NCBI GenBank assembly: GCA_963924565.1
Contig: OZ004607.1
Coordinates: 6,448,001-6,512,000 of the forward strand
Source of the DNA: Ascidiella aspersa
Lineage: Eukaryota
DNA: 64,000 nt
Reading direction: 5' to 3'
How positions within the stretch are numbered: the first letter of the stretch is position 1; each line of letters opens with the position of its first letter. The notes below the pieces were generated by a model. It worked only from the letters and a program-made list of their open reading frames with translations, was not told where the DNA came from and did not search any database. Both the position numbers and the translations under genes were made by a program. Positions 22,775-64,000 of this stretch are shown in pieces.

Positions 22775-24842
22775 ACTTAACATATTAGAAAAACAGTGGG
22801 TAACGCCAAATGTTTTGATAGAGTTTATAAAACTTTTTTTGCTGTGTATATAACATTAAATATATAGTTCACGACCATTTTATAAACGTTTGAAAAATAT
22901 AAAAAAACTACGTTATAGGTAAAAACACCACAGTTATATTGCCGATAGTAAAATTGTTCAAGTTAAGACAGTCATCAAGGTATTTATAGTTACCTACCCA
23001 AGTGCTCCTTGTCGAGCGACGGGAACCTACATCAAGGTATTCTGAGTGTATGCATTATTCTGGGACAGGTGAAAACTTTTGCAAATCTTCACAAGTCAAA
23101 ATTTTCTATTTATCTCAAAATAAACCTGTTTTTCAATCAAAAGGGTGTCACAGCTATGTCCTACATTAATAGTTTCAATTTTATAACATAGCAGACATTT
23201 TCTATACGCAAAAAAAAACACATTGCAAAAAAAACAAGTAAAGTTTAGCCCTATTTGTCCCTAATTGCCCCTTGCACGCATTGTTAATTTATCTTGCTTG
23301 GGGCCTCGACAAACAATTTAGGAAAAAGGTACAGAATACAATATATAGGGGTAATAACCGCATGCTTCTGGTTTTGAGCAAGGACTGCCGAGTCCAGTAA
23401 AAATAACCCGAGTCCGACTCCGTCAAAAAAAAATGAACCCGAGTCCAGCTCTCGAGTCCCGATTCCGAATCTGGCCAAATGTGCGTTTTGATTGGTGCCG
23501 AGCCCGTCTCTGACTCAGCTCAAAAAAGTTCAAAAATTATACTGAGCACTGATATACACCGGCTGAAAATGGTTAACGATATTCCAGCATCATGCTTCAA
23601 AATGTTTAATCTTAATAACATTTCCTTATCTATTGGCATGATAGGAATTAAAATTTAAAGGAGTTGGTCTTGTTCAATTACAACCAACCTTGTTTGATAC
23701 ATTCATGACCGATTGTACTTTCAAAGAAGCTTTCAACGTTTTCAAAGAACAGAATATAAAGGATGTGACTCAAAGGATATTCTCCAATTACGCTGAACTG
23801 TGCAGATATTTTCTGTTTTTACTTCCTTTATCAATTTCGCAAAAAATAACAAGAAAGTTTAGGTGACAGTTTCCTTCTTATGAACACGTGTCAAAGGGGT
23901 TTAAAATGTGATCTGAGTTTTGTATCCACGTGCAAGGGTATGTCGCCCAAACTATAGTTTTCTACCTATATTATTTAAAAAAGCCCAAACACTTTTTTAG
24001 CTTTGCGCGAATCTTATATGGTTTTGTGTTTAGTATTATACTACCTTTTAATTATTTCGAGGACATTTTTTTAGTACAGCTGCAATTGGGAATGAACCAA
24101 CATTGATCGTGTACCCAATGCCTTGCGTCTTGTTGTAACACAAACGTTTTGTCTATTTCAACCAGCATAATGAGCATATGATTGCAATCTTTAGCAGCGC
24201 TTCACGTTAGCGCTTTATCCCTTTTTAAATATATATATTCGACCAATTATAGAAGATGCACGCGTTCGACCGAAAATAGGAATTTCTAAGGGTAACTTGT
24301 ATCATGGCCTCACGGTAAGACGTAACGTTGGAGCTCAACGTTGGAATATGGGTGGAAAGATATTCGTACACTAGCTTGGGTTCATGGGGTAATTCATAAT
24401 TTGAAAAAAAAATGTACAGAATATATGCATTATTTTAAGCTTTCCGGGTGAAAGAGTGCTGTGTTCCAAAGGCTAAATAGTGTATGCTCCACAAAAGAGG
24501 CTTAATTTTTAACTATAAGGCTATTATTTTGTTATATTTTGGAATTGATTGTGGGACCTTATCCTAGAAAAGATGATTTATATTGGTTTCTTTTTATATC
24601 GAAATAATTAATCTTAAAATTGTAGAGGCGATTTTTTGTAAAGCAACATTGCAAACCAGAAAGGTGATAATACTTAGTGTTAATTGTAAAACCCGAATAA
24701 TTTAGCCGGGAAAATATTCAACGTTATCTGCCACGTTTAAAAACAAACATCGTTGCGATACGACGAAGAAGTTAGGAACGATCGGTCTGTAAATTTCGAG
24801 GAATTTCGACGTCCTAAAACCACAACCCATCTCGCAAAATGC

Positions 24843-24904
24843 TATATAAGCACGTTGAAGCACTTCCCAAATCACACTTTGCATTCAACAAGCAATACTA
24901 CAAG
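24843..24904 (+). promoter_or_regulatory. TATA box and short non-coding exon 1 of array copy 1 (intron 24905-25581)
   Basis: TATATAAG at 24843; AAG|GTAAGT donor at 24904/24905; acceptor tttttttgcag directly before the ATG. Equivalent TATATAAA at 32376, 41805, 51011 and 60444 (+) and 37372-37379, 46736-46743 and 56007-56014 (-). Confidence 0.8.
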
Positions 24905-25581
24905 GTAAGTGATATTTAATTACAAGTGTAAGTTTAACTATCCTAGTTTTTGCGTCGCCGAAGACCTGCAGGTTTTGTTCCTCTGGAGCAACTTTTTAAC
25001 GGCAGACCGCACCTGTGCATCTAAACACGTGGTGGCGCACCTATAGCGCAACTTTTATGTATACCAGTATTTCTCTTGTACTGGCTGTAATTTTTGCTTT
25101 ACATAGGCCTCGTAGTTAAATTATGGTATTTAAGGTACTGTGGGCCCAATAAGCTAATCCAAAGTATTAAGCAAAAATAGTAAACAATATATGTCGTACT
25201 TTTTTTCGTTGGCCCGCGGGCAGCGGTTGGGAAATGCTTCTTTGGGATTTAAGCCATATTAATTTAGGACTGATGTGACCCCTGATAAATTAAAATAAGT
25301 AGGTGTTAATGGATATAAAGGGGTTAGTCACATGGATTACCAAATGTCTTGGTGCATTTATTTAGCAACCTAAAACTATTGGTAATTATTATTATTGGCT
25401 TGCATTACGTAAAAATACTCTGCATCTCCCTTTGTTGATTAAAAATTTGTGATGGTAAAAAAGTAGGCGCCATGACTTTCTTTCCATCTGCAGTGTGTCT
25501 TGTTCAGTCTTATCAACAACAACCGACATTTCTTTCATTTATATTTAGACATTTGACTTGAGCGAAAACTTTTTTTTGCAG

Positions 25582-26151
25582 ATGAACAGCTGCATTTTGA
25601 TTTTGTCCGTTTTGGTTCTTGTCGTCGCTTTTAGCGAGGCGGCCGTGCTGCAGAACCGAAACAAGAGGCAGATTTTTTACAACGGACCAACCGGCATCCA
25701 TGGTAATGGTGCCGCAAGTCTTGGATTAGGACTTGGAGGATTCCAAGCCCAGGCATTGGCCAACGCAGGACTTGGAATTCAAGGATTTGGTGGAGCCCAT
25801 GCCGCGCTTGGCGGAACTGCCTCGATCAATAAGGAAGGGTTAAATGCCGCCGTTCAAGGCCAGGCAGGTATCGGCATTAATCACTTCGCGGGTGTTGCCG
25901 CGAATGCAGGTGGGCAACTTGCGATCAATCAGCACGGAATAGGCGCCGCGGCTAACGCAAATCTTCAAGCAAACCTTGGACCAATTCAAGCAGGAGCTAA
26001 TCTCGGCGGCGTTGCTCAACTCGGACCAAATGGATTGCACGCCGGGCTTCAAGGTGGCTTCAGCCTTGGGGATGAGTTGGGGGCTGCAGAAGGCAGGTTC
26101 CTCGAAAAGGACGGACTTTTAAACCAATATTGGATCATCGGTGCTCCCTAA
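25582..26151 (+). CDS. Secreted Gly/Ala-rich precursor, copy 1 (189 aa, intact, C-terminal variant KDGLLNQYWIIGAP)
   Basis: ATG follows the splice acceptor; hydrophobic signal MNSCILILSVLVLVVAFSEA, then RNKR and a Gly/Ala-rich core; AATAAA at 26232. Confidence 0.92.
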   Translation: MNSCILILSVLVLVVAFSEAAVLQNRNKRQIFYNGPTGIHGNGAASLGLGLGGFQAQALANAGLGIQGFGGAHAALGGTASINKEGLNAAVQGQAGIGINHFAGVAANAGGQLAINQHGIGAAANANLQANLGPIQAGANLGGVAQLGPNGLHAGLQGGFSLGDELGAAEGRFLEKDGLLNQYWIIGAP

Positions 26152-27047: not shown

Positions 27048-27098
27048 ACCTAAGCGTTAGCAACAATTTCCATTAAAATGAACTATCTAGGTCTAGGG

Positions 27099-28574: not shown

Positions 28575-29148
28575 TTAGCGAGCACCGATGGCCCAAATTG
28601 GAATTAGGAAATGATCTACGTCATTTTCGAGGAACCTGCCTTCTGCAGCCCCCAACTCATCCCCAAGGCTGAAGCCACCTTGAAGACCGGCGTGCAATCC
28701 ATTTGGTCCGAGCTGAGCAACGCCGCCGAGATTAGCTCCTGCTTGAATTGGTCCAAGGTTTGCTTGAAGATTTGCGTTAGCCGCGGCGCCTATTCCGTGC
28801 TGATTGATCGCAAGTTGCCCACCTGCATTCGCGGCAACACCCGCGAAGTGATTAATGCCGATACCTGCCTGGCCTTGAACGGCGGCATTTAACCCTTCCT
28901 TATTGATCGAGGCAGTTCCGCGAAGCGCGGCATGGGCTCCACCAAATCCTTGAATTCCAAGTCCTGCGTTGGCCAATGCCTGGGCTTGGAATCCTCCAGG
29001 TCCTAATCCAAGACTTGCGGCACCATTACCATGGATGCCGGTTGGTCCGTTAAAAAATCTGCCTTTTGTTTCGTTTCTGCAGCACGGCCGCCTCGCTAAA
29101 AGCGACGACAAGAACCAAAACGGACAAAATCAAAATGCAGCTGTTCAT
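28575..29148 (-). pseudogene. Array copy 2: a 2-bp deletion creates TAA after RNKRQIF; divergent C-terminus; exon 1 and promoter deleted
   Basis: ccgttaaaaaatctgcc at ~29047 versus ccgttgtaaaaaatctgcc in other copies; the intron is cut at ~29205 and joined to distal upstream sequence. Confidence 0.9.
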
Positions 29149-31725
29149 CTGCAAAAAAAAGTTTTCGCTCAGGTCAAATGTCTAAATATAAATGAAAGAA
29201 ATGTCCAATTCGGATGAATTTTAATTTCTGTCATGCCAATAGATAGGTAATGTTATTAGGACAAACATTTCGAAGCATTATGCTGGAATATCGTAAACCA
29301 TTTTCAGCCGGTGTGTATCACAGTGCTCAGTAACTTTTTTTAACTTGCTGAGTCAGAGACGGGCTCAGCACTCATCGAAATCGCACAATCGGCCAGAATC
29401 GCACTCGGGACTCGAAATTCGGACTCGGATTCATTTTTGTGGATGGAGTCGGACTCGGGTTATTTTTGCACGGCTCGGCAGCCCTGCCTCAAAACCCGAA
29501 ACATGCGGTTATTACCCCTATATATTGTACTTTTTATTTTATTTTCTTAAATTGTTTTTTCGAGACATCATGCAAGATAAACTAACAATGCGTGCAGGGG
29601 CAAAAAGAGCCAAACTTTTTTTTATTTTTTACAATGTTTTTTTTTTGCGTATAGTAAACGTCCGCTATGTTGTAAAATTGAAATTGTTATAGTAGGCTAT
29701 ATAGCTGTGGTAGGCTACCCTATCGCTTGGAAAGAAGTTTTATTTATTTCAAGATAAATAGAAAATTTTGACTTGTGAAGATTTGCAAAAGTTTTCGCCT
29801 GTCTAAGAATAGTGCACACACATTTAGAATACCTGCCTTAATGTACATTCCCGTATTAATTTTATTGACTATATTCGACAAGTTACACTTGGGTATAATT
29901 ATAAATACGTTGATGACTGTCTTAAGTTAGACAATATTACTATCGTCAATATTACTGTGGTGTTTTTACCTATGACGTATTTTTATTTATTCTTGCAAAC
30001 GTTTTTAAAATAGTAAGTCGTGAACAATATTGTCAATGTGTTTTACAAAGTAGAAAAGTTGTTTGGGCTCTTTATAACCACTATCAAATACATTTGGCGC
30101 TATTCACTGTTTTTCTAACCATTTGTCTTTCAATGACACTTGTACATAATGCGAAGCAAATATAGAAAAAGTAATGTAGAGGGTCTCGCCCAAAAAGTCA
30201 AAAGCGACGTGTTAAAGTTTTTGGTCGAAGAGGTGCAACTTTCATTACAAAAGCTGCATTACACACATTTTATCGATTCGCGCAAGCGATAAAACGACCT
30301 TAGGCCTAAATCGTTTAATCTACTTAAAGTGTAATTTTGAGAGATGGGTTATGACACGTACGACGCTTTGGGATAATACATGCGCAAGTGTTCCTTCGAA
30401 ATATAGTGAATAAATTTAATACGGGAACGTTATAGTACATCAAGGCAGGTATATATTCTGAGTGTAGGCCTATGTACTATTCTGGGACAGGTAAAAACTT
30501 TTGCACATATTTACAAATCAAAATTTTCTATTTATCTCAAAATAAACCTGTTTTCCAAGCGATAGGGTGCCACAGGCCACAGCTAGAGCCTACATTAATG
30601 GTTTCAATTTTACAACATCGCAGACATTGACATTTACGCAAAAAAACTCATTGCAATACATAAGTAAAGTTTAGCCCCATTTGTCCGTTATTGCCCCAAC
30701 ACGCATTGGTAATTTATCTTGCTTAATTAGTCTCTCGAAAAACAATTTATGACAAAAAAGTACAGAATACAATATGTAGTGGTAATAACCCCCTGTTTCG
30801 GGTTTGAGGCAGGGCTGCCGAGTCGAGTAAAAATAACCCGAATCCGACTCCGTCCAAAAAATGAACCCGAGTCCAACTCTCGAGTCCCGAGTCCGAATCT
30901 GGCCAAATGTGCGTTTTGATTAGTGCCGAGCCCGTCTCTGACTCAGCTCAAAAAAGTGCAAAAATGTTACTGAGCACTGATATACACCGGCTGAAAATGG
31001 TTAACGATATTCCAGCATCATGCTTCGAAATGTTTAATCTTAATAACATTTCCTTATCTAATGGCATGACAGGAATTAAAATTCAAACGAGTTGGTCTTG
31101 TTCAATTACAACCAACCTTGTTTGATACATTCATGCCCGATTGTACTTTCAAAGAAGCTTTCAACGTTTTCAAATAAAAGAATATAAAGGATGTGACTCA
31201 AAGGATATTCTCCAATTACGCTGAACTGTGCGGATATTTTCTGTTTTTACTTCCTCTATCAATTGCGCAAAAAATAACAAGAAAGTTTAGGTGACAGTTT
31301 CTTTCTTATAAACACGTGTCAAAGGGGTTTAAAATGTGATCTGAGTTTTGTATCCACGTGAAAGGGTGTATCCAGGGGGGAAGGTATGTCCCCCAAACTA
31401 TATTTTTTTACTGATATCATTAAAATAAGCTCAAACACTTTTTTAGCTTTGCGCGAATCTTATATGGTTTTGTACTTAGTATACTACCTTTTAATTATTT
31501 CGAGTATAATTTTTAGTACAACTGCATTTGGGAATGTACAAACATTTATCGTGTACCCAATGCCTTGCGTCTAGTTCTAACATAAAGGTTTTGTCAATTT
31601 CAACCATCTGATCTCAATATTTTTGCGCTCACGCTTTATCCCTTTTCAAATATATACATTGGACCAAGTATCGTAGATGAACGAGTTCGACCGGACATAG
31701 GAATTTCTAAAGGTAACTTGTATCA

Positions 31726-31747
31726 TGACGTCACGTTATGACGTAAC
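31726..31747. promoter_or_regulatory. CRE/ATF-like pair TGACGTCA plus TGACGTAA ~650 bp upstream of the TATA box
   Basis: Perfect TGACGTCA at 31726, 38024, 41154, 47227, 56659 and 59794; mutated to TGACTTCA at 50361; absent in copy 1 (~24305). Confidence 0.5.
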
Positions 31748-33114: not shown

Positions 33115-33684
33115 ATGAACAGCTGCATTTTGATTTTGTCCGTTTTGGTTCTTGTCGTCGCTTTTAGCGAGGCGGCCGTGCTGCAGAACCGAAACAAGAG
33201 GCAGATTTTTTACAACGGACCAACCGGCATCCATGGTAATGGTGCCGCAAGTCTTGGATTAGGACTTGGAGGATTCCAAGCCCAGGCATTGGCCAACGCA
33301 GGACTTGGAATTCAAGGATTTGGTGGAGCCCATGCCGCGCTTGGCGGAACTGCCTCGATCAATAAGGAAGGGTTAAATGCCGCCGTTCAAGGCCAGGCAG
33401 GTATCGGCATTAATCACTTAGCGGGTGTTGCCGCGAATGCAGGTGGGCAACTTGCGATCAATCAGCACGGAATAGGCGCCGCGGCTAACGCAAATCTTCA
33501 AGCAAACCTTGGACCAATTCAAGCAGGAGCTAATCTCGGCGGCGTTGCTCAACTCGGACCAAATGGATTGCACGCCGGGCTTCAAGGTGGCTTCAGCCTT
33601 GGGGATGAGTTGGGGGCTGCAGAAGGCAGGTTCCTTGAAAATGACGGAGTTTTTAACAAATATTGGATCGTCGGTGCTCCCTAA
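33115..33684 (+). CDS. Secreted Gly/Ala-rich precursor, copy 3 (189 aa, intact; NHL instead of NHF)
   Basis: ORF 33109..33684 with the ATG after the acceptor; donor at 32437/32438. Confidence 0.93.
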   Translation: MNSCILILSVLVLVVAFSEAAVLQNRNKRQIFYNGPTGIHGNGAASLGLGLGGFQAQALANAGLGIQGFGGAHAALGGTASINKEGLNAAVQGQAGIGINHLAGVAANAGGQLAINQHGIGAAANANLQANLGPIQAGANLGGVAQLGPNGLHAGLQGGFSLGDELGAAEGRFLENDGVFNKYWIVGAP

Positions 33685-49000: not shown

Positions 49001-51749
49001 AACACCACAGTAATATTAACGATAGTAATATTGTCTAACTTAAGACAGTCATCAACGTATTTATAATTATACCCAAGTGTAACTTGTCGAATATAGTCAA
49101 TAAAATTAATACGGGAATGTACATTAAGGCAGGTATTCTAAATGTGTGTGCACTATTCTTAGACAGGCGAAAACTTTTGCAAATCTTCACAAGTCAAAAT
49201 TTTCTATTTATCTTGAAATAAATAAAACTTCTTTCCAAGCGATAGGGTAGCCTACCACAGCTATATAGCCTACTATAACAATTTCAATTTTACAACATAG
49301 CGGACGTTTACTATACGCAAAAAAAACATTGTAATAAATAAAAAAAAGTTTGGCTCTTTTTGCCCCTGCACGCATTGTTAGTTTATCTTGCATGATGTCT
49401 CGAAAAAACAATTTAAGAAAATAAAATAAAAAGTACAATATATAGGGGTAATAACCGCATGTTTCGGGTTTTGAGGCAGGGCTGCCGAGCCGTGCAAAAA
49501 TAACCCGAGTCCGACTCCATCCACAAAAATGAATCCGAGTCCGAATTTCGAGTCCCGAGTGCGATTCTGGCCGATTGTGCGATTTCGATGAGTGCTGAGC
49601 CCGTCTCTGACTCAGCAATTTAAATAAAGTTACTGAGCACTGATACACACCGGCTGAAAACGGTTTACGATATTCCAGCATCATGCTTCGAAATGTTTGT
49701 CCTAATAACATTACCTATCTATTGGCATGACAGAAATTAAAATTCATCCGAATTGGTCTTGTTCAATTTCAACCATAACCCTTTAGACATATTCATGACC
49801 TATTGCATTTTCTAAGAAGTTTTCAACGTTTTAAAAATAAAATAAAAAGGAAGTGCCTTGAAGGATATTCTCCAATTACGCTGAACTGTGCGGATATTTT
49901 CTGTTTTTACTTTCTCTTGCAATTGCGCAAAAAATGACAAGAAAGTTTAGGTGCCAGTTTCCTTCTTATAAACACGTGTCAAAGGGGTTTAAAATGTGAT
50001 CTGAGTTTTGTATCCACGTGCAAGGGTGTTTTCAGGGGGAAGGTATGTCCTCCAAACTATATTTTTTACCGATATTATTTAAATAAGCTCAAACACTTTT
50101 ATAGCTTTGCGCGAATCTTTTAGGGTTTTGTACTTAGTATACTACCTTTTAATTATTTCGAGGATAATTTTTAGTACAGCTGCATTTGGGAATGTACAAA
50201 CATTTATCGTGTACCCAATGCCTTGCGTCTAGTTCTAACATAAACGTTTTGTCAATTTCAACCATCTGATCGCAATATTTTTGCGCTCACGCTTTATCCC
50301 TTTTCAAATATATTCATTCGACCAAGTATAGTAGATGAACGAGTTCGACCGGAAATATCATGACTTCACGTTATGACGTAACTTTCGACCCCTACGTTAA
50401 AACGACGCCGGGAAGATATTTGTACTCTAGCGTGGGTTTATTAGGTAGGTTATAATTTGAAAAAAATGTACAGAATATATCCATTATTTTAAGCTTTTCC
50501 GGGTGAAAGAGTAGTGTGTTCCAAACGCTTCAGTCTATGCTCCATAAAATGGCTCAAATTATTAACTTTATGACACTTCTCTTCTGTTTTATTTTGGTAT
50601 CGATTGTGGGACCAAGCTTTCGCTTGCCCAAATAGTATTTTCGAAAAAATAGGCTTTATTTAATTACCAAAACCCCAGAAACGCTCATATTGGTTCTTTC
50701 ACTGCATTTAAAAGCAAATATACCTAATCAATTAAACCAAAAGATGATTATCGGTTTCTTAATATATCGGAATAATTAATCTTAATACAGTTTAGAGGCG
50801 ATTTTTGTAAAGCAACATTGCAAAACACACAGGTGGTAATGCTTATTGTTAATTGTAAAACCCGAAAAATTTTGCCGGGAAAATATTCAACGTTATCTGC
50901 CACGTTTAAAAACAAACATCGTTGCGATACGACGAAGAAGTTAGGAACGATCGGTCTGTAAGTTTCGAGGAATTTTGACGTCCTAAACCACAACGCACCT
51001 CGCAAAATGCTATATAAACGCGACGAAGCACGTCCCAAATCACACTTTGCATTCAACAAGCAATACTACAAGGTAAGTGATATTTAATTACAAACGTAAG
51101 CTTAACTATCCTAGTTTTTGCGTCGCCGAAGACCTGCTGGTTTTGTTCCTCTGGAGCAACTTTTTAACGTCAGATCGCACCTGTGTATCTAAACACGTGG
51201 TGGCGCGCCTATAGCGCAACTTTTATTTATACCAGTATTTGGCTTGTACTGGCTGTAGATTTTGCTTTACATAGGCCTCGTAGTTGAATTATGGTCTTTA
51301 AAGTACTGTGGGCCCAATAAGCTAATCCAAAGTATTCAGCAAAAATAGTAAACAATATATGTCGTACTTTTTTTCGTTGGCCCTCGGGCAGCGGTCGGGA
51401 AATGCTTCTTTTGTAATTTAAGCCATATTAATTTAGGACTGATGTGACCCCTGATAAATTAATACAAGTAGGTGTTAATGGATATAAAGGGGTTAGTCAC
51501 ATGGATTACCAAATGTCTTGGTGCATTTATTTAGCAACCTAAAACTATTGGTAATTATTATTATTGGCTTGCATTACGTAAAAATACTCTGCATCTCCCT
51601 TTGTTGATTAAAAATTTGTGATGGTAAAAAAGTAGGCGCCATGACTTTCTTTCCATCTGCAGTGTGTCTTGTTCAGTCTTATCAACAACAACCGACATTT
51701 CTTTCATTTATATTTAGACATTTGACTTGAGCGAAAATTTTTTTTGCAG

Positions 51750-52319
51750 ATGAACAGCTGCATTTTGATTTTGTCCGTTTTGGTTCTTGTCGTCGCTTTT
51801 AGCGAGGCGGCCGTGCTGCAGAACCGAAACAAGAGGCAGATTTTTTACAACGGACCAACCGGCATCCATGGTAATGGTGCCGCAAGTCTTGGATTAGGAC
51901 TTGGAGGATTCCAAGCCCAGGCATTGGCCAACGCAGGACTTGGAATTCAAGGATTTGGTGGAGCCCATGCCGCGCTTGGCGGAACTGCCTCGATCAATAA
52001 GGAAGGGTTAAATGCCGCCGTTCAAGGCCAGGCAGGTATCGGCATTAATCACTTCGCGGGTGTTGCCGCGAATGCAGGTGGGCAACTTGCGATCAATCAG
52101 CACGGAATAGGCGCCGCGGCTAACGCAAATCTTCAAGCAAACCTTGGACCAATTCAAGCAGGAGCTAATCTCGGCGGCGTTGCTCAACTCGGACCAAATG
52201 GATTGCACGCCGGGCTTCAAGGTGGCTTCAGCCTTGGGGATGAGTTGGGGGCTGCAGAAGGCAGGTTCCTTGAAAATGACGGAGTTTTTAACAAATATTG
52301 GATCGTCGGTGCTCCCTAA
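51750..52319 (+). CDS. Secreted Gly/Ala-rich precursor, copy 7 (189 aa, intact)
   Basis: ORF 51744..52319; donor at 51072/51073. Confidence 0.93.
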   Translation: MNSCILILSVLVLVVAFSEAAVLQNRNKRQIFYNGPTGIHGNGAASLGLGLGGFQAQALANAGLGIQGFGGAHAALGGTASINKEGLNAAVQGQAGIGINHFAGVAANAGGQLAINQHGIGAAANANLQANLGPIQAGANLGGVAQLGPNGLHAGLQGGFSLGDELGAAEGRFLENDGVFNKYWIVGAP

Positions 52320-54705
52320 AAAGTAGAAGCGATCATCTTTACAGCCTAATTGCAACAATAGTCATTCTCATGTTTACATTTGATGGTTATTTGTCATGGC
52401 GGTCAGAATAAAAGTTACATAAATGTACAAAACAACCATGTTAAGGTCAGCAAACTGTTTTAATCGCTCGAAAAACGATGTGACTGAACATATTCTTATA
52501 CATTTTAGCAGTTAGATCAGTTCATCAACCAACCGATTTTATACTGTAAATTTAAGAAATTGGTGTATATACATATAGGCTAGAACCAGTGACCAAATTT
52601 GTTCTCGAGACCTCCTTTAAGATATTCCATAACTTACGCGAGACCCTATTATAGTAGATTACACGTAAACCAAAGGCAATTAGAATCATATTACACAAAA
52701 CTAACTAAAATCAAGGTATAGCGTTTATTCGGGTTATTACGACTTGAATAGAAAAGTGCATTGACCGCTCGCAAAGTAACGAAAATAGGTTTAAGGAAAC
52801 TCGTAATTAACCAAGCAATATAAGGATTGTTTTACTATTGTATTTCAAAGTATAAAGCAGGAGTCTTGACTTTTTTACCAGTACACTTTCGATTTGTCTG
52901 CAAGTAAGGTGTATCCCATTAGAATAATTATCCCTACTGTTCACCTAAGCCAGTGCTTTTCAACCTTTTTGCTGGAGTAGAATGCCATGGAAACATTTCA
53001 CTGGCTCGAGGAACCCGAGTGCAATAATTTCACTGGCTCGAGGAACCCCAGTGCAATAAACACACCCCAATTAGCTACGCAATTTAGAAATTGCGGAACC
53101 CCTGGCCTGTACTAGCGGAACCCTTGGGTTCATCGGACCATGGTTGAAAACCACTGACCTAAGCAGTAGCAACAATTTCTATTAAAATGAATTCTCCAGG
53201 TCTAGGGCAGTGTTTCTTAATAAGGTGATTGGTTTACCCCAGGGTGAATAAATTTTTTTAAGGGTTGAACCAACCAAAAGGGGTGAATAAGGGTGAACGG
53301 TCAGAACGTGAATGATAGCTTGCGAACAAGGCGGATATTCCGGGTGTTCAGTGAACAGGTGGGAATTACCAAAAACAAAATTAATTCTAAGTTTTTTCAC
53401 AAGGATGAATGGAATCTGTAGATTGATGCTAGGAGTAAACAAAACTAAAAAAGGTTTAAGAAACACTGCTCTAGGGTATGCCCACGTTTTGCGATACCGG
53501 ATCAAAATATGTAACAGCATTGTCCTACTTTAATACTTAAGAGAAAAATAGAATATCACAAACCCATCAATAAAATATCACTTCCAAAAAATATCGTCTT
53601 ATTTTATATTTAAAACAGTTTAGACCAGGACCAGGAGTCCTAATCTTCTAAGTGACAGGAGTAAGCGAGAGAAATTTGCGCAGATACCCTAGAGCAGTGG
53701 TTCTTAAACTGTTTTTAGTTTTGTATACCCCTAGCATCGATCTCCAGATTCTATTAACCCTGATAAAAAAACTTAATTTAGTTTTTGGAAGTTCTCACCT
53801 GTTCACTAAACAGGTTGAACACCCGGAATACCACCCTGCTCGCAAGCTATCATCCATTTCTGACGGTTCACCCTTATTTACTCCTTTTGGTTGATTCACC
53901 CCTGCAAAATGTTATTCACCCGGGGTGGACCAATCACCTGATTAAGAAACACTGCCCTAGACCTGGAGAGTTTATTTAAATAGAATATAAATTGTTGCTA
54001 ACACTTAGGTGAACAGTTGGGATAATTATTCTGATGGCATACACCTTACATGCAGACAAATCGAAAGTGTACTGGTAAAAAAGTTCAAGACTTCTGCTTT
54101 ATACTTTGAAATACAATAGTAAAACAATCACTATATTGTTTGGTTAATTACGAGTTTCCATAAACCGATTTTCATTGTTACTTCACGAGCGGCCAATACA
54201 TTTTTCTATTCAAGTCGTAATGACCCGAATAAACGCTATACCTTGATTTTAGTTAGTTTTGTATAGTTTTGACGACATTCTTGGCAAAGTGAAACAACCC
54301 ATTCAGACAATTAATCGAACTGCCATTTTGAATAGGATTCTAATTGCCTCTGGTTTACGTGTAATCTACTAAAATAGGGTCTCGCGTAAGTTATGGAATA
54401 TCTTAAAGGAGGTCTCGAGAACAAATATTTTGGCCACTGGTCTAGCTTACACACATATACACCAATTTCTAGAACTTAATGTATAAAATCGGTTGGTTGA
54501 TGAACTGATCTAACTGCTAAAATGTATAAGATTCTGTTCAGTCACATCGTTTTTCGAGCGATTAAAACAGTTTGCTGACCTTAACATGGTTGTTTTATAC
54601 ATTTCTGTAACTTTTATTCTGACCGCCATGACAAATAACCATCAAATGTAAACATGAGAATGACTATTGTTGCGATTAGGCTGTAAAGATGATCGCTTCT
54701 ACTTT

Positions 54706-55275
54706 TTAGGGAGCACCGATGATCCAATTTGAGTTAAAAACTCCGTCATTTTCGAGGAACCTGCCTTCTGCAGCCCTCAACTCATCCCCAAGGCTGAAGC
54801 CACCTTGAAGACCGGCGTGCAATCCATTTGGTCCGAGTTGAGCAACGCCGCCGAGATTAGCTCCTGCTTGAATTGGTCCAAGGTTTCCTTGAAGATTTGC
54901 GTTAGCTCCGACGCCTATTCCGTGCTGATTGATCGCAAGTTGCCCACCTGCATTCGCGGCAACACCTGCGAAGTGATTAATGCCGATACCTGCTTGGCCT
55001 TGAACGGCGGCATTTAACCCTTCCTTATTGATCGAGGCAGTTCCGCCAAGCGCGGCTTGGGCTCCACCAAATCCATGAATTCCAAGTCCTGCGTTGGCCA
55101 ATGCCTGGGCTTGGAATCCTCCAGGTGCTAATCCAAGACTTGCGGCACCATTACCATGGATGCCGGTTGGTCCGTTGTAAAAAATCTGCCTTTTGTTTCG
55201 TTTCTGCAGCACGGCCGCCTCGCTGAAAGCGACGACAAGAACCAAAACGGACAAAATCAAAATGCAGCTGTTCAT
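54706..55275 (-). CDS. Secreted Gly/Ala-rich precursor, copy 8 (189 aa; the only intact - copy; variant isoform)
   Basis: ORF 54706..55281; differences include QKRNKR, LAPGG, IHG, AQA, VGANA, GNLG, ELRA and FNSNWII. Confidence 0.9.
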   Translation of the reverse strand: MNSCILILSVLVLVVAFSEAAVLQKRNKRQIFYNGPTGIHGNGAASLGLAPGGFQAQALANAGLGIHGFGGAQAALGGTASINKEGLNAAVQGQAGIGINHFAGVAANAGGQLAINQHGIGVGANANLQGNLGPIQAGANLGGVAQLGPNGLHAGLQGGFSLGDELRAAEGRFLENDGVFNSNWIIGAP

Positions 55276-58200
55276 CTGCAAAAAAAAGTTTTCGCTCAGG
55301 TCAAATGTCTAAATATAAATGAAAGAAATGTCGGTTGTTGTTGATAAGACTAAACAAGTCACACTGCAGATAGAAAGAAAGTAATGACGCCTACTTTTTA
55401 CCATCACAAATTTTTAATCAACAAATGTAGGTGCTGAGTATCTATACGTAATGCAAGCCAATAAAAATAATTACCAATAGTTTTAGGTTGCTAAATAAAT
55501 GCACCAAGACGTTTGTTAATCCATGTGGCTACCCCCTTTATATCCATTAACACCTACTTATTTTAATTTATCAAGGGTCACATCAGTCCTAAATTAATAT
55601 GGCTTAAATCCCAAAATAAGCATTTCCCAACCGCTGCCCGCGGGCCAACGAAAAAAAGTACAACATATATTATTTACCATTTTTGCTTAATACTTTGGCT
55701 TAGCTCATTGGGCCCACAGTACCTTAAATACCATAATTCAACTACGAGGCGTATGTAAAGCAAAAATTACAGCCAGTACAAGAGAAATATTGGTATACAT
55801 AAAATTTGCGCTATAGGTGCGCCACCACGTGTTTAGATACACAAGTGCGGTCTGACGTTAAAAAGTTGCTCCAGAGGAACAAAACCAGCAGGTCTTCGGC
55901 GACACAAAAACTAGGATAGTTAAACTTACACTTGTACTTTAATATCACTTACCTTGTAGTATTGCTTGTTGAGTGCAAAGTGTGATTTGGGACGTGCTTC
56001 GTCGCGTTTATATAGCATTTTGCGAGGTGCGTTGTGGTTTTAGGACGTCAAAATTCCTCGAAACTTACAGACCGATCGTTCCTAACTTCTTCGTCGTATC
56101 GCAACGATGTTTGTTTTTAAACGTGGCAGATAACGTTGAATATTGTCCCGGCTAAATTATTCGGGTTTTACAATTAACAATAAGCATTACCACCTTTCTG
56201 GTTTGCAATGTTGCTTTACAAAAAATCGCCTCTAAACTGTATTAAGATTAATTATTCCGATATATTAAGAAACCGATAATCATCTTTTGGTTTAGTTGAT
56301 TAGATATATTTGCTTTTAAATTCAGTGAGAGAACCAATATGAGCGTTTCTGGGGTTTTGGTAATTAAATAAACCCTATTTTTTCGAAAAAACTATTTGGG
56401 CAAGCGAAAGCTTGGTGCCACAATCGATAGCAAAATAAAACAGAAGAGAAGTGTCATAAAGTTAATAATTTGTGCCATTTTATGGAACATAGACTGTAGC
56501 ATTTGGAACACACTACTCTTTCACCCGGAAAAGCTTAAAATAACGGATATATTCTGTACATTTTTTTCAAATTATAACCTACCTAATAAACCCACGCTAG
56601 AGTACAAATATCTTCCCGGCGTTGTTTTAACGTAGGGGTCGAAAGTTACGTCATAACGTGACGTCATGATACAAGTTACATTTATAAATTCCTATGTCCG
56701 GTCGAACTCGTTCATCTACGATACTTGGTCCAATGTATATATTTGAAAAGGGATAAAGCGTGAGCGCAAAAATATTGAGATCAGATGGTTGAAATTGACA
56801 AAACCTTTATGTTAGAACTAGACGCAAGGCATTGGGTACACGATAAATGTTTGTACATTCCCAAATGCAGCTGTACTGAAAAATTATCCCCGAAATAATT
56901 AAAAGGTAGTATACTAAGTAAAAAAACATATAAGATTCGCGCAAAGCTAAAAAAGTGTTTGAGCTTATTTAAATAAAATCGGTAAAAAAATATAGTTTGG
57001 GGGATATAGCTTCCTCCCTGGATACACCCTTGCACGTGGATACAAACTCAGATCACATTTTAAACCCCTTTGACACGTGTTTATAAGAAGGAAACTGTCA
57101 CCTAAACTTACTTGTTATATTTTGCGCAATGGATAGAGGAAGTAAAAACAGAAAATATCCGCACAGTTCAGCGTAATTGGAGAATGTCCTTTAAGTCACA
57201 TCCTTTATATTCTTTTATTTGAAAACGTTGAAAGCTTCTTTGAAAATACAATCAGGCATGAATGTATCAAACAAGGTTGGTTGTAATTGAACAAGACCAA
57301 CTCGTTTGAATTTTAATTCCTGTCATGCCAATAGATAAGGAAATGTTATTAAGATTAAACATTTCGAAGCATGATGCTGGAATATCGTTAACCATTTTCA
57401 GCCGGTGTATATCAGTGCTCAGTAACATTTTTGAACTTTTTTGAGCTGAGTCAGAGACGGGCTCGGCACTAATCAAAACGCACATTTGGCCAGATACGGA
57501 CTCGGGACTTGAGAGCTGGACTCGGGTTCATTTTTTGGACGTTATCGAACTCGGGTTATTTTTACCCGACTCGGTAGCACTGCCTTAAAACCCGAAACAT
57601 GTGGTTATTACCCCTACATATTGTATTCTGTACTTTTTTGTCATAAATTGTTTTTCGAGAGACCAATTAAGCAAGATAAATTACCAATGCGTGTTGGGGC
57701 AATAACGGACAAATGGGGCTAAACTTTACTTATGTATTGCAATGAGTTTTTTTGCGTAGGCTATAGTAAATGTCTGCTATGTTGTAAAATTGAAACCATT
57801 AATGTAGGCTATAGCTGTGGCCTGTGGCACCCTATCGCTTGGAAAGCAGGTTTATTTTGAGATAAGTAGAGAATTTTGACTTGTGAAGATGTGCAAAAGT
57901 TTTTACCTGTCCCAGAATAGTGCATAGGCCTACACTCAGAGTATATACCTGCCTTGATGTACTATAAACGTTCCCGTATTAAATTTATTCACTATATTTC
58001 GAAGGAACACTTGCGCATGTATTATCCCAAAGCGTCGTACGTGTCATAACCCATCTCTCAAAACTACCCTTTAAGTAAATTAAACGATTTAGGCCTAAGG
58101 TCGTTTTATCGCTTGCGCGAATCGATAAAATGTGTGTAATGCAGCTTTTGTAATGAAAGTTGCACCTCTTCGACCAAAAACTTTAACACGTCGCTTTTGA

Positions 58201-61182
58201 CTTTTTGGGCGAGACCATCTACATTACTTTTTCTATATTTGCTTCGCATTATGTACAAGTGTCATTGAAAGACAAATGGTTAGAAAAACAGTGAATAGCG
58301 CCAAATGTATTTGATAGTGGTTATAAAGAGCCCAAACAACTTCTCTACTTTGTAAAACACATTGACTATATTGTTCACGACTTACTATTTTAAAAACGTT
58401 TGCAAGAATAAATAAAAATACGTCTTAGGTAAAAACACCACAGTAATATTAACGATAGTAATATTGTCTAACTTAAGACAGTCATCAACGTATTTATAAT
58501 TATACCCAAGTGTAACTTGTCGAATATAGTCAATAAAATTAATACGGGAATGTACATTAAGGCAGGTATTCTAAATGTGTGTGCACTATTCTTAGACAGG
58601 CGAAAACTTTTGCAAATCTTCACAAGTCAAAATTTTCTATTTATCTTGAAATAAATAAAACTTCTTTCCAAGCGATAGGGTAGCCTACCACAGCTATATA
58701 GCCTACTATAACAATTTCAATTTTACAACATAGCGGACGTTTACTATACGCAAAAAAAACATTGTAATAAATAAAAAAAAGTTTGGCTCTTTTTGCCCCT
58801 GCACGCATTGTTAGTTTATCTTGCATGATGTCTCGAAAAAACAATTTAAGAAAATAAAATAAAAAGTACAATATATAGGGGTAATAACCGCATGTTTCGG
58901 GTTTTGAGGCAGGGCTGCCGAGCCGTGCAAAAATAACCCGAGTCCGACTCCATCCACAAAAATGAATCCGAGTCCGAATTTCGAGTCCCGAGTGCGATTC
59001 TGGCCGATTGTGCGATTTCGATGAGTGCTGAGCCCGTCTCTGACTCAGCAATTTAAATAAAGTTACTGAGCACTGATACACACCGGCTGAAAACGGTTTA
59101 CGATATTCCAGCATCATGCTTCGAAATGTTTGTCCTAATAACATTACCTATCTATTGGCATGACAGAAATTAAAATTCATCCGAATTGGTCTTGTTCAAT
59201 TTCAACCATAACCCTTTAGACATATTCATGACCTATTGCATTTTCTAAGAAGTTTTCAACGTTTTAAAAATAAAATAAAAAGGAAGTGCCTTGAAGGATA
59301 TTCTCCAATTACGCTGAACTGTGCGGATATTTTCTGTTTTTACTTTCTCTTGCAATTGCGCAAAAAATGACAAGAAAGTTTAGGTGCCAGTTTCCTTCTT
59401 ATAAACACGTGTCAAAGGGGTTTAAAATGTGATCTGAGTTTTGTATCCACGTGCAAGGGTGTTTTCAGGGGGAAGGTATGTCCTCCAAACTATATTTTTT
59501 ACCGATATTATTTAAATAAGCTCAAACACTTTTATAGCTTTGCGCGAATCTTTTAGGGTTTTGTACTTAGTATACTACCTTTTAATTATTTCGAGGATAA
59601 TTTTTAGTACAGCTGCATTTGGGAATGTACAAACATTTATCGTGTACCCAATGCCTTGCGTCTAGTTCTAACATAAACGTTTTGTCAATTTCAACCATCT
59701 GATCGCAATATTTTTGCGCTCACGCTTTATCCCTTTTCAAATATATTCATTCGACCAAGTATAGTAGATGAACGAGTTCGACCGGAAATATCATGACGTC
59801 ACGTTATGACGTAACTTTCGACCCCTACGTTAAAACAACGCCGGGAAGATATTTGTACTCTAGCGTGGATTTATTAGGTAGGTTATAATTTGAAAAAAAT
59901 GTACAGAATATATCCATTATTTTAAGCTTTTCCGGGTGAAAGAGTAGTGTGTTCCAAACGCTTCAGTCTATGCTCCATAAAATGGCTCAAATTATTAACT
60001 TTATGACACTTCTCTTCTGTTTTATTTTGCTATCGATTGTGGGACCAAGCTTTCGCTTGCCCAAATAGTATTTTCGAAAAAATAGGCTTTATTTAATTAC
60101 CAAAACCCCAGAAACGCTCATATTGGTTCTTTCACTGCATTTAAAAGCAAATATACCTAATCATTTAAACCAAAAGATGATTATCGGTTTCTTAATATAT
60201 CGGAATAATTAATCTTAATACAGTTTAGAGGCGATTTTTGTAAAGCAACATTGCAAAACACACAGGTGGTAATGCTTATTGTTAATTGTAAAACCCGAAA
60301 AATTTTGCCGGGAAAATATTCAACGTTATCTGCCACGTTTAAAAACAAACATCGTTGCGATACGACGAAGAAGTTAGGAACGATCGGTCTGTAAGTTTCG
60401 AGGAATTTTGACGTCCTAAACCACAACGCACCTCGCAAAATGCTATATAAACGCGACGAAGCACGTCCCAAATCACACTTTGCATTCAACAAGCAATACC
60501 ACAAGGTAAGTGATATTTAATTACAAACGTAAGCTTAACTATCCTAGTTTTTGCGTCGCCGAAGACCTGCTGGTTTTGTTCCTCTGGAGCAACTTTTTAA
60601 CGTCAGATCGCACCTGTGTATCTAAACACGTGGTGGCGCGCCTATAGCGCAACTTTTATGTATACCAGTATTTGGCTTGTACTGGCTGTAGATTTTGCTT
60701 TACATAGGCCTCGTAGTTGAATTATGGTCTTTAAAGTACTGTGGGCCCAATAAGCTAATCCAAAGTATTAAGCAAAAATAGTAAACAATATATGTCGTAC
60801 TTTTTTTCGTTGGCCCTCGGGCAGCGGTCGGGAAATGCTTCTTTTGTAATTTAAGCCATATTAATTTAGGACTGATGTGACCCCTGATAAATTAATACAA
60901 GTAGGTGTTAATGGATATAAAGGGGTTAGTCACATGGATTACCAAATGTCTTGGTGCATTTATTTAGCAACCTAAAACTATTGGTAATTATTATTATTGG
61001 CTTGCATTACGTAAAAATACTCTGCATCTCCCTTTATTGATTAAAAATTTGTGATGGTAAAAAAGTAGGCGCCATGACTTTCTTTCCATCTGCAGTGTGT
61101 CTTGTTCAGTCTTATCAACAACAACCGACATTTCTTTCATTTATATTTAGACATTTGACTTGAGCGAAAATTTTTTTTGCAG

Positions 61183-61752
61183 ATGAACAGCTGCATTTTG
61201 ATTTTGTCCGTTTTGGTTCTTGTCGTCGCTTTTAGCGAGGCGGCCGTGCTGCAGAACCGAAACAAGAGGCAGATTTTTTACAACGGACCAACCGGCATCC
61301 ATGGTAATGGTGCCGCAAGTCTTGGATTAGGACTTGGAGGATTCCAAGCCCAGGCATTGGCCAACGCAGGACTTGGAATTCAAGGATTTGGTGGAGCCCA
61401 TGCCGCGCTTGGCGGAACTGCCTCGATCAATAAGGAAGGGTTAAATGCCGCCGTTCAAGGCCAGGCAGGTATCGGCATTAATCACTTCGCGGGTGTTGCC
61501 GCGAATGCAGGTGGGCAACTTGCGATCAATCAGCACGGAATAGGCGCCGCGGCTAACGCAAATCTTCAAGCAAACCTTGGACCAATTCAAGCAGGAGCTA
61601 ATCTCGGCGGCGTTGCTCAACTCGGACCAAATGGATTGCACGCCGGGCTTCAAGGTGGCTTCAGCCTTGGGGATGAGTTGGGGGCTGCAGAAGGCAGGTT
61701 CCTTGAAAATGACGGCGTTTTTAACAAATATTGGATCGTCGGTGCTCCCTAA
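61183..61752 (+). CDS. Secreted Gly/Ala-rich precursor, copy 9 (189 aa, intact)
   Basis: ORF 61177..61752; donor at 60505/60506. Confidence 0.93.
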   Translation: MNSCILILSVLVLVVAFSEAAVLQNRNKRQIFYNGPTGIHGNGAASLGLGLGGFQAQALANAGLGIQGFGGAHAALGGTASINKEGLNAAVQGQAGIGINHFAGVAANAGGQLAINQHGIGAAANANLQANLGPIQAGANLGGVAQLGPNGLHAGLQGGFSLGDELGAAEGRFLENDGVFNKYWIVGAP

Positions 61753-64000
61753 AAAGTAGAAGCGATCATCTTTACAGCCTAATTGCAACAATAGTCATTC
61801 TCATGTTTACATTTGATGGTTATTTGTCATGGCGGTCAGAATAAAAGTTACATAAATGTACAAAACAACCATGTTAAGGTCAGCAAACTGTTTTAATCGC
61901 TCGAAAAACGATGTGACTGAACATATTCTTATACATTTTAGCAGTTAGATCAGTTCATCAACCAACCGATTTTATACTGTAAATTTAAGAAATTGGTGTA
62001 TATACATATAGGCTAGAACCAGTGACCAAATTTGTTCTCGAGACCTCCTTTAAGATATTCCATAACTTACGCGAGACTCTATTATAGTAGATTACACGTA
62101 AACCAAAGGCAATTAGAATCATATTACACAAAACTAACTAAAATCAAGGTATAGCGTTTATTCGGGTTATTACGACTTGAATAGAAAAGTGCATTGACCG
62201 CTCGCAAAGTAACGAAAATAGGTTTATAGAAACTCGTAATTAACCAAGCAATATAAGGATTGTTTTACTATTGTATTTCAAAGTATAAAGCAGGAGTCTT
62301 GACTTTTTTACCAGTACAATTTCGATTTGTCTGCAAGTAAGGTGTATCCCATTAGAATAATTATCCCTACTGTTCACCTAAGCCAGTGCTTTTCAACCTT
62401 TTTGCTGGAGTAGAATGCCATGGAAACATTTCACTGGCTCGAGGAACCCGAGTGCAATAATTTCACTGGCTCGTGAAACCCCAGTGTAATAAACACACCC
62501 CCAATTAGCTACACAATTTAGAAATTGCGGAACCCCTGGCCTGTACTAGAGGAACCCTTGGGTTCATCGCACCCTGGTTGAAAACCACTGACCTAAGCGT
62601 TAGCAACAATTTCTATTAAAATGAATTCTCTAGGTCTAGGGCAGTATTTCTTAATAAGGTGATTGGTTTACCCCAGGGTGAATAAATTTTTTTAAGGGTT
62701 GAACCAACCAAAAGGGGTGAATAAGGGTGAACGGTCAGAACATGAATGATAGCTTGCGAACAAGGCGGATATTCCGGGTGTTCAGTGAACAGGTGGGAAT
62801 TACCAAAAACAAAATTAATTCTAAGTTTTTTCACAAGGATGAATGGAATCTGTAGATTGAAGCTAGGAGTAAACAAACTAAAAAAGGTTTAAGAAACACT
62901 GCTCTAGGGTATGCCCACGTTTTGCGATACCGGATCAAAATATGCAACAGCATTGTCCTACTTTAATACTTAAGAGAAAAATAGAATATCACAAACCCAT
63001 CAATAAAATATCACTTCCAAAAAATATCGTCTTATTTTATATTTAAAACAGTTTAGACCAGGACCAGGAGTCCTAATCTTCTAAGTGACAGGAGTAAGCG
63101 AGAGAAATTTGCGCAGATACCCTAGAGCAGTGGTTCTTAAACTGTTTTTAGTTTTGTATACCCCTAGCATCGATCTCCAGATTCTATTAACCCTGATAAA
63201 AAAACTTAATTTAGTTTTTGGAAATTCTCACCTGTTCACTAAACAGGTTGAACACCCGGAATACCACCCTGCTCGCAAGCTATCATCCATTTCTGACGGT
63301 TCACCCTTATTTACTCCTTTTGGTTGATTCACCCCTGCAAAATGTTATTCACCCGGGGTGGACCAATCACCTGATTAAGAAACACTGCCCTAGACCTGGA
63401 GAGTTTATTTAAATAGAATATAAATTGTTGCTAACACTTAGGTGAACAGTTGGGATAATTATTCTGATGGCATACACCTTACATGCAGACAAATCGAAAG
63501 TGTACTGGTAAAAAAGTTCAAGACTTCTGCTTTATACTTTGAAATACAATAGTAAAACAATCACTATATTGTTTGGTTAATTACGAGTTTCCATAAACCG
63601 ATTTTCATTGTTACTTCACGAGCGGCCAATACATTTTTCTATTCAAGTCGTAATGACCCGAATAAACGTTATACCTTGATTTTAGTTAGTTTTGTATAGT
63701 TTTGACGACATTCTTGGCAAAGTGAAACAACCCATTCTGACAATTAATCGAACTGCCATTTTGAATATGATTCTAATTGCCTCTGGTTTACGTGTAATCT
63801 ACTAAAATAGGGTCTCGCGTAAGTTATGGAATATCTTAAAGGAGGTCTCGAGAACAAATATTTTGGCCACTGGTCTAGCTTACACACATATACACCAATT
63901 TCTAGAACTTAATGTATAAAATCGGTTGGTTGATGAACTGATCTAACTGCTAAAATGTATAAGATTCTGTTCAGTCACATCGTTTTTCGAGCGATTAAAA

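What the first reader, a model, noticed from the sequence alone, without database searches (positions are those of the whole stretch)
22785..64000. Palindromic, alternating-orientation amplification of an unrecognised secreted-protein gene (at least 9 copies)
Seen: one ~4.5 kb gene module is repeated +,-,+,-... so every junction is either a tail-to-tail palindrome (unique spacer ~27370-27560 and equivalents) or a head-to-head palindrome (spacer ~30120-30420 and equivalents). The +/- pair is then tandemly amplified at ~9.2-9.4 kb, and the 3' flank of a tenth copy is at the window end. Inference: an older inverted duplication followed by recent amplification, consistent with selection for high dosage of a secreted product (defence, coat or adhesive protein).
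Basis: partly seen in the sequence, partly recalled or inferred. Interest (0 to 1): 0.85.

Follow-up and report, generated by a model that had tools for sequence, protein, structure and literature searches.

The report
Inverted-pair tandem array of orphan gene
A sea-squirt chromosome carries ten copies (seven intact) of a short gene for a secreted glycine/alanine-rich protein with no known relatives; the copies sit as five tandem repeats of a back-to-back pair, an ordinary way for gene families to grow, and no expression data could be obtained.

Summary
From window 22785 to about 3.6 kb past the window end lies a 44.8-kb array. It has five tandem units (periods 7533, 9429, 9206 and 9433 bp), and each unit is a convergent pair of about 4.2-kb arms. 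Each arm holds one 567-nt ORF: signal peptide, RNKR furin-type site, then a Cys-free Gly/Ala/Leu/Asn/Gln-rich 160-residue protein with cryptic 15/33-residue repeats.

All five + copies are intact. Of the five − copies, two are intact and three are broken (a 2-bp, a 1-bp and a roughly 67-bp deletion); one of the broken copies has also lost its promoter region. These ten are the only copies in the 308.6-Mb genome, which is a tunicate by its CesA-type GT2–GH6 locus.

Trees, 247 diagnostic sites and a SINE-like insertion found in every + arm and no − arm point to one old inverted duplication. The pair was then amplified in tandem, with later gene conversion and a spacer flip. This is not repeated palindromic amplification.

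The protein has no Pfam, PDB or database relative, and "attacin-like" is analogy only. Selection for dosage is untested. I file it as a new member of a known kind, of moderate interest.

The parts
22785..64000 (.). Array of five tandem units, each a convergent inverted pair. It continues to about 67631 in extended coordinates (L014:1-3631).
25582..26151 (+). P1 CDS, intact. The protein differs from P4 at 5 residues, all in the C-terminal tail. P1 is identical to P4 from -11 to +521.
28579..29148 (-). M1, broken copy: a 2-bp deletion at CDS nt 98-99. Upstream homology ends 57 bp before the ATG (at 29205), so the promoter region is lost.
29205..30384 (.). Rearranged first head-to-head centre: 683 bp of P-type distal upstream (29205-29891) plus the spacer (29892-30384), both flipped relative to the later units.
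33115..33684 (+). P2 CDS, intact. Its distal upstream beyond about -1100 is M-type (mosaic).
36072..36640 (-). M2, broken copy: a 1-bp deletion at CDS nt 130.
42544..43113 (+). P3 CDS, intact.
45504..46003 (-). M3, broken copy: a deletion of about 67 bp starting at CDS nt 258, a further upstream deletion at 46857, and P-type conversion tracts.
51750..52319 (+). P4 CDS, intact; used as the reference copy.
51483..51749 (+). Candidate promoter and 5' leader of P4, from sequence only: TATAAA at about -268, a possible donor TTG|GTAATT at about -198, and the acceptor tttttttgcag directly before the ATG. The acceptor could serve cis-splicing or SL trans-splicing.
52944..53176 (+). SINE-like dispersed element of about 227 bp (88-92% identical to many genomic copies), containing a 32-bp x2 tandem repeat. 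It is present in every + arm and absent from every − arm.
53177..53985 (.). Tail-to-tail centre: two inverted copies of a dispersed repeat of about 300 bp (53177-53479 and 53684-53985, 82% alike) around a 204-bp loop (53480-53683).
54706..55275 (-). M4 CDS, intact, M-type protein with 12 residue differences from P4. It is identical to M5, which lies beyond the window.
58003..58519 (.). Head-to-head spacer of 517 bp, unique in the genome. Its equivalents are 39363-39879 and 48570-49086.
61183..61752 (+). P5 CDS, intact.
63437..64000 (-). 3' flank of the tenth copy, M5. Its intact CDS is at G000:C1:6512142-6512708 (−).

Best explanation
This is a real, lineage-restricted gene array in a tunicate genome. 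A single-copy gene for a small secreted protein was first duplicated in inverted orientation. The gene encodes a signal peptide, a short propeptide ending in a furin-type RNKR site, and a 160-residue Cys-free Gly/Ala/Leu/Asn/Gln-rich mature chain built of degenerate 15-18-residue repeats. The turning point of the inverted duplication lies at a pre-existing inverted pair of ~300-bp dispersed repeats downstream of the gene, which suggests fold-back or template switching (inferred). A SINE-like element then entered the + arm. After that, the whole 9.4-kb convergent pair was multiplied in tandem to five units by unequal crossing-over; the three right-hand units are the youngest. Since then the arms have exchanged sequence by gene conversion, and one head-to-head spacer has flipped by recombination between inverted arms. 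Three − copies have decayed independently. Seven copies can still encode protein: five P-type and two M-type. The product is most likely an abundant extracellular protein, either a self-assembling matrix, coat or adhesive component or a humoral defence protein. That part is inferred from composition and architecture only.
For: - **Geometry and identity tiers:**
- **Copy census:** these are the only 10 copies in 308.6 Mb, and there are no haplotig copies.
- **No assembly gaps:** searches found no N runs.
- **Clades:** P and M form reciprocal clades in the proximal upstream (98/98) and downstream (100/99) segments; the CDS agrees roughly (94/88, with M1 on the P side).
- **Timing marker:** the SINE-like element occurs only in + arms, and in all five of them.
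- **Seed repeat:** the central inverted pair of dispersed repeats is only 81-82% alike, beside arms that are 91-94% alike, and the family has many genomic copies at 81-85%.
- **Conversion mosaics:** P1 is identical to P4 over 533 bp while its flanks are 72-97% identical. Runs of P or M state at 247 diagnostic sites appear in P1, P2, M1 and M3.
- **Flipped spacer:**
- **Gene features:**
- **Protein repeats:** autocorrelation at lag 15 has z = 5.8 and at lag 33 z = 4.0.
- **Tunicate identity:** PF03552 and PF01341 hits lie 2.7 kb apart on one strand.
Against:
- Units 3-5 differ by about 0.6-1%. From general knowledge, that is within the range of allelic divergence in highly heterozygous tunicates, so part of the copy number could be an assembly error.
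- dN/dS of 0.6 rests on 20 substitutions and is not distinguishable from neutrality.
- 3 of 10 copies are broken.
- There is no homologue in any library, so coding status rests on sequence features alone.
- The AlphaFold2 model has low confidence, pLDDT 55.
- The fold-back origin is inferred from anatomy, not demonstrated.
Confidence: 0.62

Rival explanations
1. The copy number is inflated by assembly error. Haplotypes of a highly heterozygous tunicate, or mis-resolved repeats, were laid down in tandem, and the true array is one or two inverted pairs.
For: Units 3, 4 and 5 are 98.9-99.4% identical over 7.7-9.1 kb. From general knowledge, that divergence is comparable to allelic divergence in tunicates. 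No reads could be laid on the region.
Against: There are no gaps in the 74 kb examined. The units differ structurally: the periods are 9429, 9206 and 9433 bp, M3 has its own deletions, and M2 has a private frameshift. Two haplotypes cannot give three near-identical units plus two older ones. No extra copies sit on unplaced contigs.
Confidence: 0.12
2. The array grew by repeated palindromic steps, each step making a new inverted junction. Candidate processes are breakage-fusion-bridge cycles or origin-dependent inverted-repeat amplification.
For: The copies alternate +,−,+,− in orientation. Inverted repeats sit at the tail-to-tail centres. ODIRA is known to give inverted triplications (PMC4689423, abstract).
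Against: Same-orientation arms are much closer to each other (99%+) than to their mirror partners (91-96%). The SINE-like element is confined to + arms in all units; repeated fold-back would have copied it into − arms. All units share the same asymmetric spacers.
Confidence: 0.08
3. The ORF is not a working gene, or no longer is one. The array is then a neutral segmental duplication that spread because inverted and tandem repeats are recombination-prone, with no dosage benefit.
For: 3 of 10 copies are broken, each by a different lesion. dN/dS is 0.6 and not significant. There is no homologue anywhere and no expression evidence. Gly/Ala-rich frames tend to stay open on both strands, and antisense ORFs of about 100 aa are present.
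Against: Seven 189-codon ORFs remain open in 38% GC DNA. The N-terminus is a canonical signal peptide with an SEA|A cleavage motif and a conserved R-x-K-R site in both P and M types. The ATG directly follows a polypyrimidine-AG acceptor, and AATAAA lies about 90 nt after the stop. TATA and donor motifs are conserved between P and M arms. The CDS is more conserved between arms (96-97.5%) than its immediate flanks (90-94%).
Confidence: 0.18

Closest known systems
Sex-chromosome ampliconic palindromes (human Y P1-P8, primate X palindromes)
   Same: Inverted arms surround a unique spacer and carry a gene. The arms show arm-to-arm gene conversion and spacer inversion by recombination between arms, and some are further amplified (PMC8600007 and PMC8327919, abstracts).
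   Different: The arms here are about 4 kb, not tens of kb to Mb, and are only 90-96% alike instead of above 99%. The gene encodes a secreted protein, and its expression pattern is unknown.
Drosophila Hsp70 loci (an inverted pair, plus tandem copies at the second locus), from general knowledge
   Same: An inverted duplication of a short intron-poor gene was followed by tandem duplication, with concerted evolution through gene conversion.
   Different: Hsp70 is a conserved cytosolic chaperone. Here the gene is an orphan secreted protein, and the whole inverted pair is the tandem unit.
Silkmoth chorion gene clusters, from general knowledge
   Same: Oppositely oriented gene pairs are repeated many times in tandem, encode Gly/Ala-rich secreted structural proteins, and are homogenised by gene conversion. 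Copy number serves bulk synthesis.
   Different: Chorion pairs join two different families across a bidirectional promoter of about 300 bp. Here both members are the same gene, the ATGs are 5.9 kb apart, and the close junction is tail-to-tail.
Inverted-repeat-seeded palindromic duplication (fold-back priming, ODIRA; PMC4689423, PMC7999016)
   Same: A pre-existing inverted repeat with a short loop lies exactly at the centre of the tail-to-tail palindrome.
   Different: Only the first step fits this mechanism; later growth was tandem. The mechanism is inferred from anatomy alone.
Insect attacins and other Gly-rich immune proteins
   Same: Both have a signal peptide, a propeptide ending in R-x-K/R-R, and a mature Gly-rich protein of about 160-190 residues without cysteines. 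Both are encoded by clustered multi-copy genes.
   Different: There is no sequence match to Attacin_N, Attacin_C or any other Pfam family, even at E = 10. The host is a tunicate, the mature chain has a net negative charge, and no induction or activity data exist.

Membership tests
Attacin family (Pfam Attacin_N PF03768 / Attacin_C PF03769) | Significant sequence match to the attacin domains | tested here: not met
   hmmscan against Pfam-A gave 0 families at E<=1 for the precursor and at E<=10 for the mature chain of both types.
Attacin family (Pfam Attacin_N PF03768 / Attacin_C PF03769) | Signal peptide plus a propeptide ending in a furin-type R-x-K/R-R site before a Gly-rich mature chain | tested here: met
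   A hydrophobic N-terminus ends in SEA|A, followed by NRNKR (P-type) or KRNKR (M-type) before Gln30. The mature chain is 24% Gly and 19% Ala. The architecture is shared with many unrelated precursors.
Attacin family (Pfam Attacin_N PF03768 / Attacin_C PF03769) | Antibacterial activity or immune induction | not testable with these tools
   No expression or activity data could be reached.
Palindrome with arm-to-arm gene conversion (sex-chromosome type) | Two inverted arms around a unique spacer | tested here: met
   Arms are about 4.1-4.4 kb, with 190-204-bp tail-to-tail loops and 517-bp head-to-head spacers.
Palindrome with arm-to-arm gene conversion (sex-chromosome type) | Sequence exchange between arms | tested here: met
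   Runs of P or M state at 247 diagnostic sites occur in P1, P2, M1 and M3. P-versus-M identity is patchy, from 77% to 98%.
Palindrome with arm-to-arm gene conversion (sex-chromosome type) | Arm identity above about 99% | tested here: not met
   Opposite arms are 90-96% identical.
Tandem array grown by unequal crossing-over | Regular period, with same-orientation copies closer to each other than to their neighbours | tested here: met
   The periods are 9429, 9206 and 9433 bp. P3-P5 and M2, M4 and M5 are 99.0-99.5% identical, and P/M clades are supported.
Iterated palindromic amplification (BFB / ODIRA) | The youngest relationship lies across each inverted junction, and insertions are mirrored in both arms | tested here: not met
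   Mirror partners are older than same-orientation copies. The SINE-like element occurs only in + arms.
Silkmoth chorion-type paired gene array | Two different gene families divergently transcribed from a short shared promoter | tested here: not met
   Both members are the same gene, and the divergent ATGs are 5.7-5.9 kb apart (4.0 kb in the rearranged M1/P2 junction).

The most novel reading that the evidence does not exclude
The orphan could be a tunicate-born, possibly de novo, self-assembling secreted repeat protein. It might be a beta-rich or amyloid-like matrix, coat or adhesive component, or a convergent attacin-like immune protein in a chordate. On this reading its supply is set by an autosomal palindrome array that arm-to-arm gene conversion and unequal crossing-over keep in flux. 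That would make it a small autosomal counterpart of sex-chromosome ampliconic palindromes, with copy number varying between individuals.
Probability: 0.15. Interest if true: 0.65.

Novelty: new member of a known kind. Interest (0 to 1): 0.4.

Why it matters
If expressed, this gene would add a taxonomically restricted, high-copy secreted protein to tunicate biology, where the tunic, egg coat, adhesives and humoral immunity rely heavily on lineage-specific proteins. The array is also a compact, fully resolved record of how a gene family grows: an inverted duplication at an inverted dispersed-repeat pair, then tandem amplification, then conversion, spacer inversion and decay. The architecture itself is a known kind, and the dosage argument is not yet backed by any expression or population data.

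Tried and rejected
- **Pfam:** no family at E<=1 or E<=10 for the precursor, the mature chain or the M-type protein. The other arm ORFs gave only sub-threshold noise.
- **Word-indexed search of 5.8 billion proteins:** nothing.
- **phmmer over 1.84 billion representatives:** one hit, a bacterial Asp/Thr-rich repeat protein (P0001, E = 4.8e-6, 4 stretches). I judged it compositional.
- **Exact-sequence look-up of four variants:** absent.
- **PDB sequences at E<=10:** none.
- **JGI metagenome scan:** none.
- **ESM Atlas:** best score 0.83, below the useful range.
- **Rfam on the window:** no family.
- **AlphaFold2, single sequence:** pLDDT 55 and pTM 0.21, so I did not send the model to fold search.
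- **Six-frame search of the window's own genome at E<=10:** no distant paralogues outside the array.
- **Bacterial promoter/terminator scan:** at chance level, and irrelevant for a eukaryote.
- **Head-to-head spacer:** no notable inverted repeat at its edges.
Full report
**1. Is the repeat there?**

Yes. The repeat finder and a self-BLAST of the window show families of five direct copies with start-to-start spacings of about 7533, 9429, 9206 and 9433 bp. They are interleaved with inverted matches of 0.6-4.9 kb. I fetched the next 10 kb of the chromosome (L014) and searched one unit (window 49074-58506) against the extended sequence. The array runs from 22785 to extended coordinate 67631, about 44.8 kb, and contains no N runs. 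A tblastn of the ORF and a six-frame search of the whole 308.6-Mb assembly place ten copies of the coding sequence. All ten are in this array and none is on another contig.

**2. Anatomy**

Each unit is a convergent pair. The P4 arm has these parts:
- 2.72 kb of upstream sequence, shared with its mirror partner
- a 567-nt ORF at 51750-52316, with its stop codon at 52317-52319
- about 0.63 kb of shared downstream sequence
- a dispersed SINE-like element of about 227 bp, found only on the + side (52944-53176)
- a dispersed repeat of about 300 bp (53177-53479), whose inverted partner (53684-53985) lies across a 204-bp loop

Head-to-head arms are separated by a unique 517-bp spacer at 39363-39879, 48570-49086 and 58003-58519.

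The first unit is rearranged. M1 keeps only 57 bp of upstream sequence. Next come 683 bp of P-type distal upstream and the spacer, both flipped (29205-30384). Those for the head-to-head spacer fall inside the rearranged first one.

**3. State of the copies**

- P1-P5 are intact, and P3, P4 and P5 encode the same protein.
- P2 differs from them by one residue. P1 differs by five, all in the C-terminal tail.
- M4 and M5 are intact and identical to each other, with 12 residue differences from P4.
- M1 has a 2-bp deletion, M2 a 1-bp deletion, and M3 a deletion of about 67 bp.

Seven of the ten copies could therefore be functional, and all three broken copies are on the − strand.

**4. History**

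Across the full arm alignment (2.6 kb upstream to about 0.95 kb downstream of the CDS), P3-P5 are 99.0-99.4% identical to each other. M2, M4 and M5 are 99.4-99.5% identical. P3-P5 versus the M arms is about 92.4-93.1%, and P1 versus everything else is about 91-93%.

Maximum-likelihood trees by segment give reciprocal P and M clades in the proximal upstream (98/98) and the downstream flank (100/99). The CDS gives the same split more weakly (94/88), with M1 on the P side.

The SINE-like element, with its 32-bp x2 tandem repeat, lies in all five + arms and in no − arm. This fixes the order of events: the inverted duplication came first, then the insertion (or a loss in the − arm), then tandem multiplication of the pair. 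Iterated fold-back amplification (BFB or ODIRA; PMC4689423) would make mirror partners the closest relatives and would copy insertions into both arms. Neither is seen.

The two central dispersed repeats are only 81-82% alike, no more alike than unrelated genomic members of their family (81-85%). The adjoining arm sequence is 91-94% alike. The simplest reading is that the two repeats already stood as an inverted pair downstream of the single ancestral gene and served as the turning point of the inverted duplication. This is an inference from anatomy.

**5. Later exchange between arms**

- P1 is identical to P4 over 533 bp (-11 to +521), although its flanks are 72-97% identical.
- P2 is M-type beyond about -1100 and P-type from there on.
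- M3 carries P-type tracts, including -174 to -75.
- M1 has a P-type run inside its CDS.
- P-versus-M identity along the arm is patchy: 77-85% in the distal part, 95-98% from -1650 to -800, 90-94% from -700 to -180, 96-97.5% in the CDS and 91-94% downstream.

Together with the flipped first spacer, this is the behaviour expected of palindromes: gene conversion and inversion by recombination between arms (PMC8600007 and PMC8327919).

**6. The gene**

The ATG directly follows tttttttgcag. A TATAAA lies at about -268 and a plausible donor (TTG|GTAATT) at about -198. An AATAAA lies about 90 nt after the stop. All of these are conserved between P arms and M2-M5. The acceptor could serve a short 5'-UTR intron, or spliced-leader trans-splicing, which is common in tunicates (general knowledge). 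I could not decide between the two without RNA data.

The precursor has a hydrophobic signal sequence ending in SEA|A and a nine-residue propeptide ending in RNKR. The mature chain is 160 residues and starts with Gln. It has 38 Gly, 30 Ala, 18 Leu, 15 Asn and 12 Gln, no Cys, and more acidic than basic residues. BLOSUM autocorrelation of the core peaks at lags 15 (z = 5.8) and 33 (z = 4.0), so the core is built of degenerate repeats.

P-versus-M dN/dS is 0.60, from 13 non-synonymous and 7 synonymous changes. That is too few to distinguish from neutrality.

**7. What the protein is related to**

Nothing could be detected. All of the following were blank or only compositional:
- Pfam at E<=10
- PDB sequences at E<=10
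- the 5.8-billion-protein word search
- phmmer over 1.84 billion representatives
- the exact-sequence look-up
- a metagenome scan
- the ESM Atlas

HMMER's compositional-bias correction may hide distant Gly/Ala-rich relatives, so "orphan" here means no detectable relative. The single-sequence AlphaFold2 model has low confidence (pLDDT 55), and I did not use it further.

The attacin comparison made by other first-stage notes on this window holds for precursor architecture only. The family's defining domains were tested and not found.

**8. Organism and surroundings**

Earlier notes from this scan call the genome a sea squirt. I tested this independently. A cellulose-synthase hit (PF03552) lies 2.7 kb upstream of a GH6 hit (PF01341) on the same strand of contig 5. 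This GT2–GH6 arrangement is characteristic of tunicate CesA. To the left of the array are two ODF3-like exons with SHIPPO repeats.

**9. What could not be done**

True copy number, expression, transcript ends and tissue are therefore untested. Units 3-5 differ by about 0.6-1%, which is within allelic divergence for tunicates (general knowledge). Assembly inflation thus cannot be fully excluded. Against it stand the gap-free contig, the unit-specific lesions and the presence of more than two near-identical units.

**10. Verdict**

The proposed order of events is supported, with the correction that the amplification step was tandem, not palindromic. The dosage-selection claim is open, and is weakened by three decayed copies. 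The array is a new member of a known kind of architecture, and it carries a protein with no detectable relatives. I rate the interest as moderate (0.4).

Noticed in passing
window 10888-11331 (-) and 14745-15143 (-): Two similar ORFs with sperm-tail PG-rich (SHIPPO, PF07004) repeats (E = 3.5e-13 and 6.3e-15). They look like a duplicated ODF3-like exon.
   Followed up: partly
window 6590-7687 (+): A 365-aa ORF lies in a 54% GC island within 38% GC DNA. It has no Pfam match, and long overlapping ORFs run on the other strand.
   Followed up: partly
window 53177-53479 and 53684-53985; 52944-53176: Two dispersed short repeat families, about 270-300 bp and about 210-227 bp, have dozens of copies on most large contigs at 77-92% identity. 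They are probably SINE or MITE families of this genome.
   Followed up: partly
window 51837-52241 (mature chain of P4): The protein core has cryptic periodicity at 15 and 33 residues (z = 5.8 and 4.0). Rows of 33 residues align on a G-[IL]-G-I-x-x-F-x-G pattern.
   Followed up: partly
window 26090-26148 (P1), 52258-52316 (P4), 54709-54767 (M4): The C-terminal tail of about 20 residues is the most variable part of the protein. All five P1-versus-P4 changes fall there, as do five of the twelve P-versus-M changes.
   Followed up: no
G000:C5:19610700-19614090 (+): Cellulose-synthase and GH6 hits lie 2.7 kb apart on one strand, the tunicate CesA-type arrangement. I used this only to confirm the taxon.
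   Followed up: partly
window 1801-2113, 2720-2908, 10645-10898: Tandem repeats with periods of 105, 57 and 108 bp (2.3-3.4 copies each) lie in the left flank.
   Followed up: no
L014:6281-8480 (+): A run of ORFs of 92-134 aa on one strand begins 2.6 kb after the array ends.
   Followed up: no
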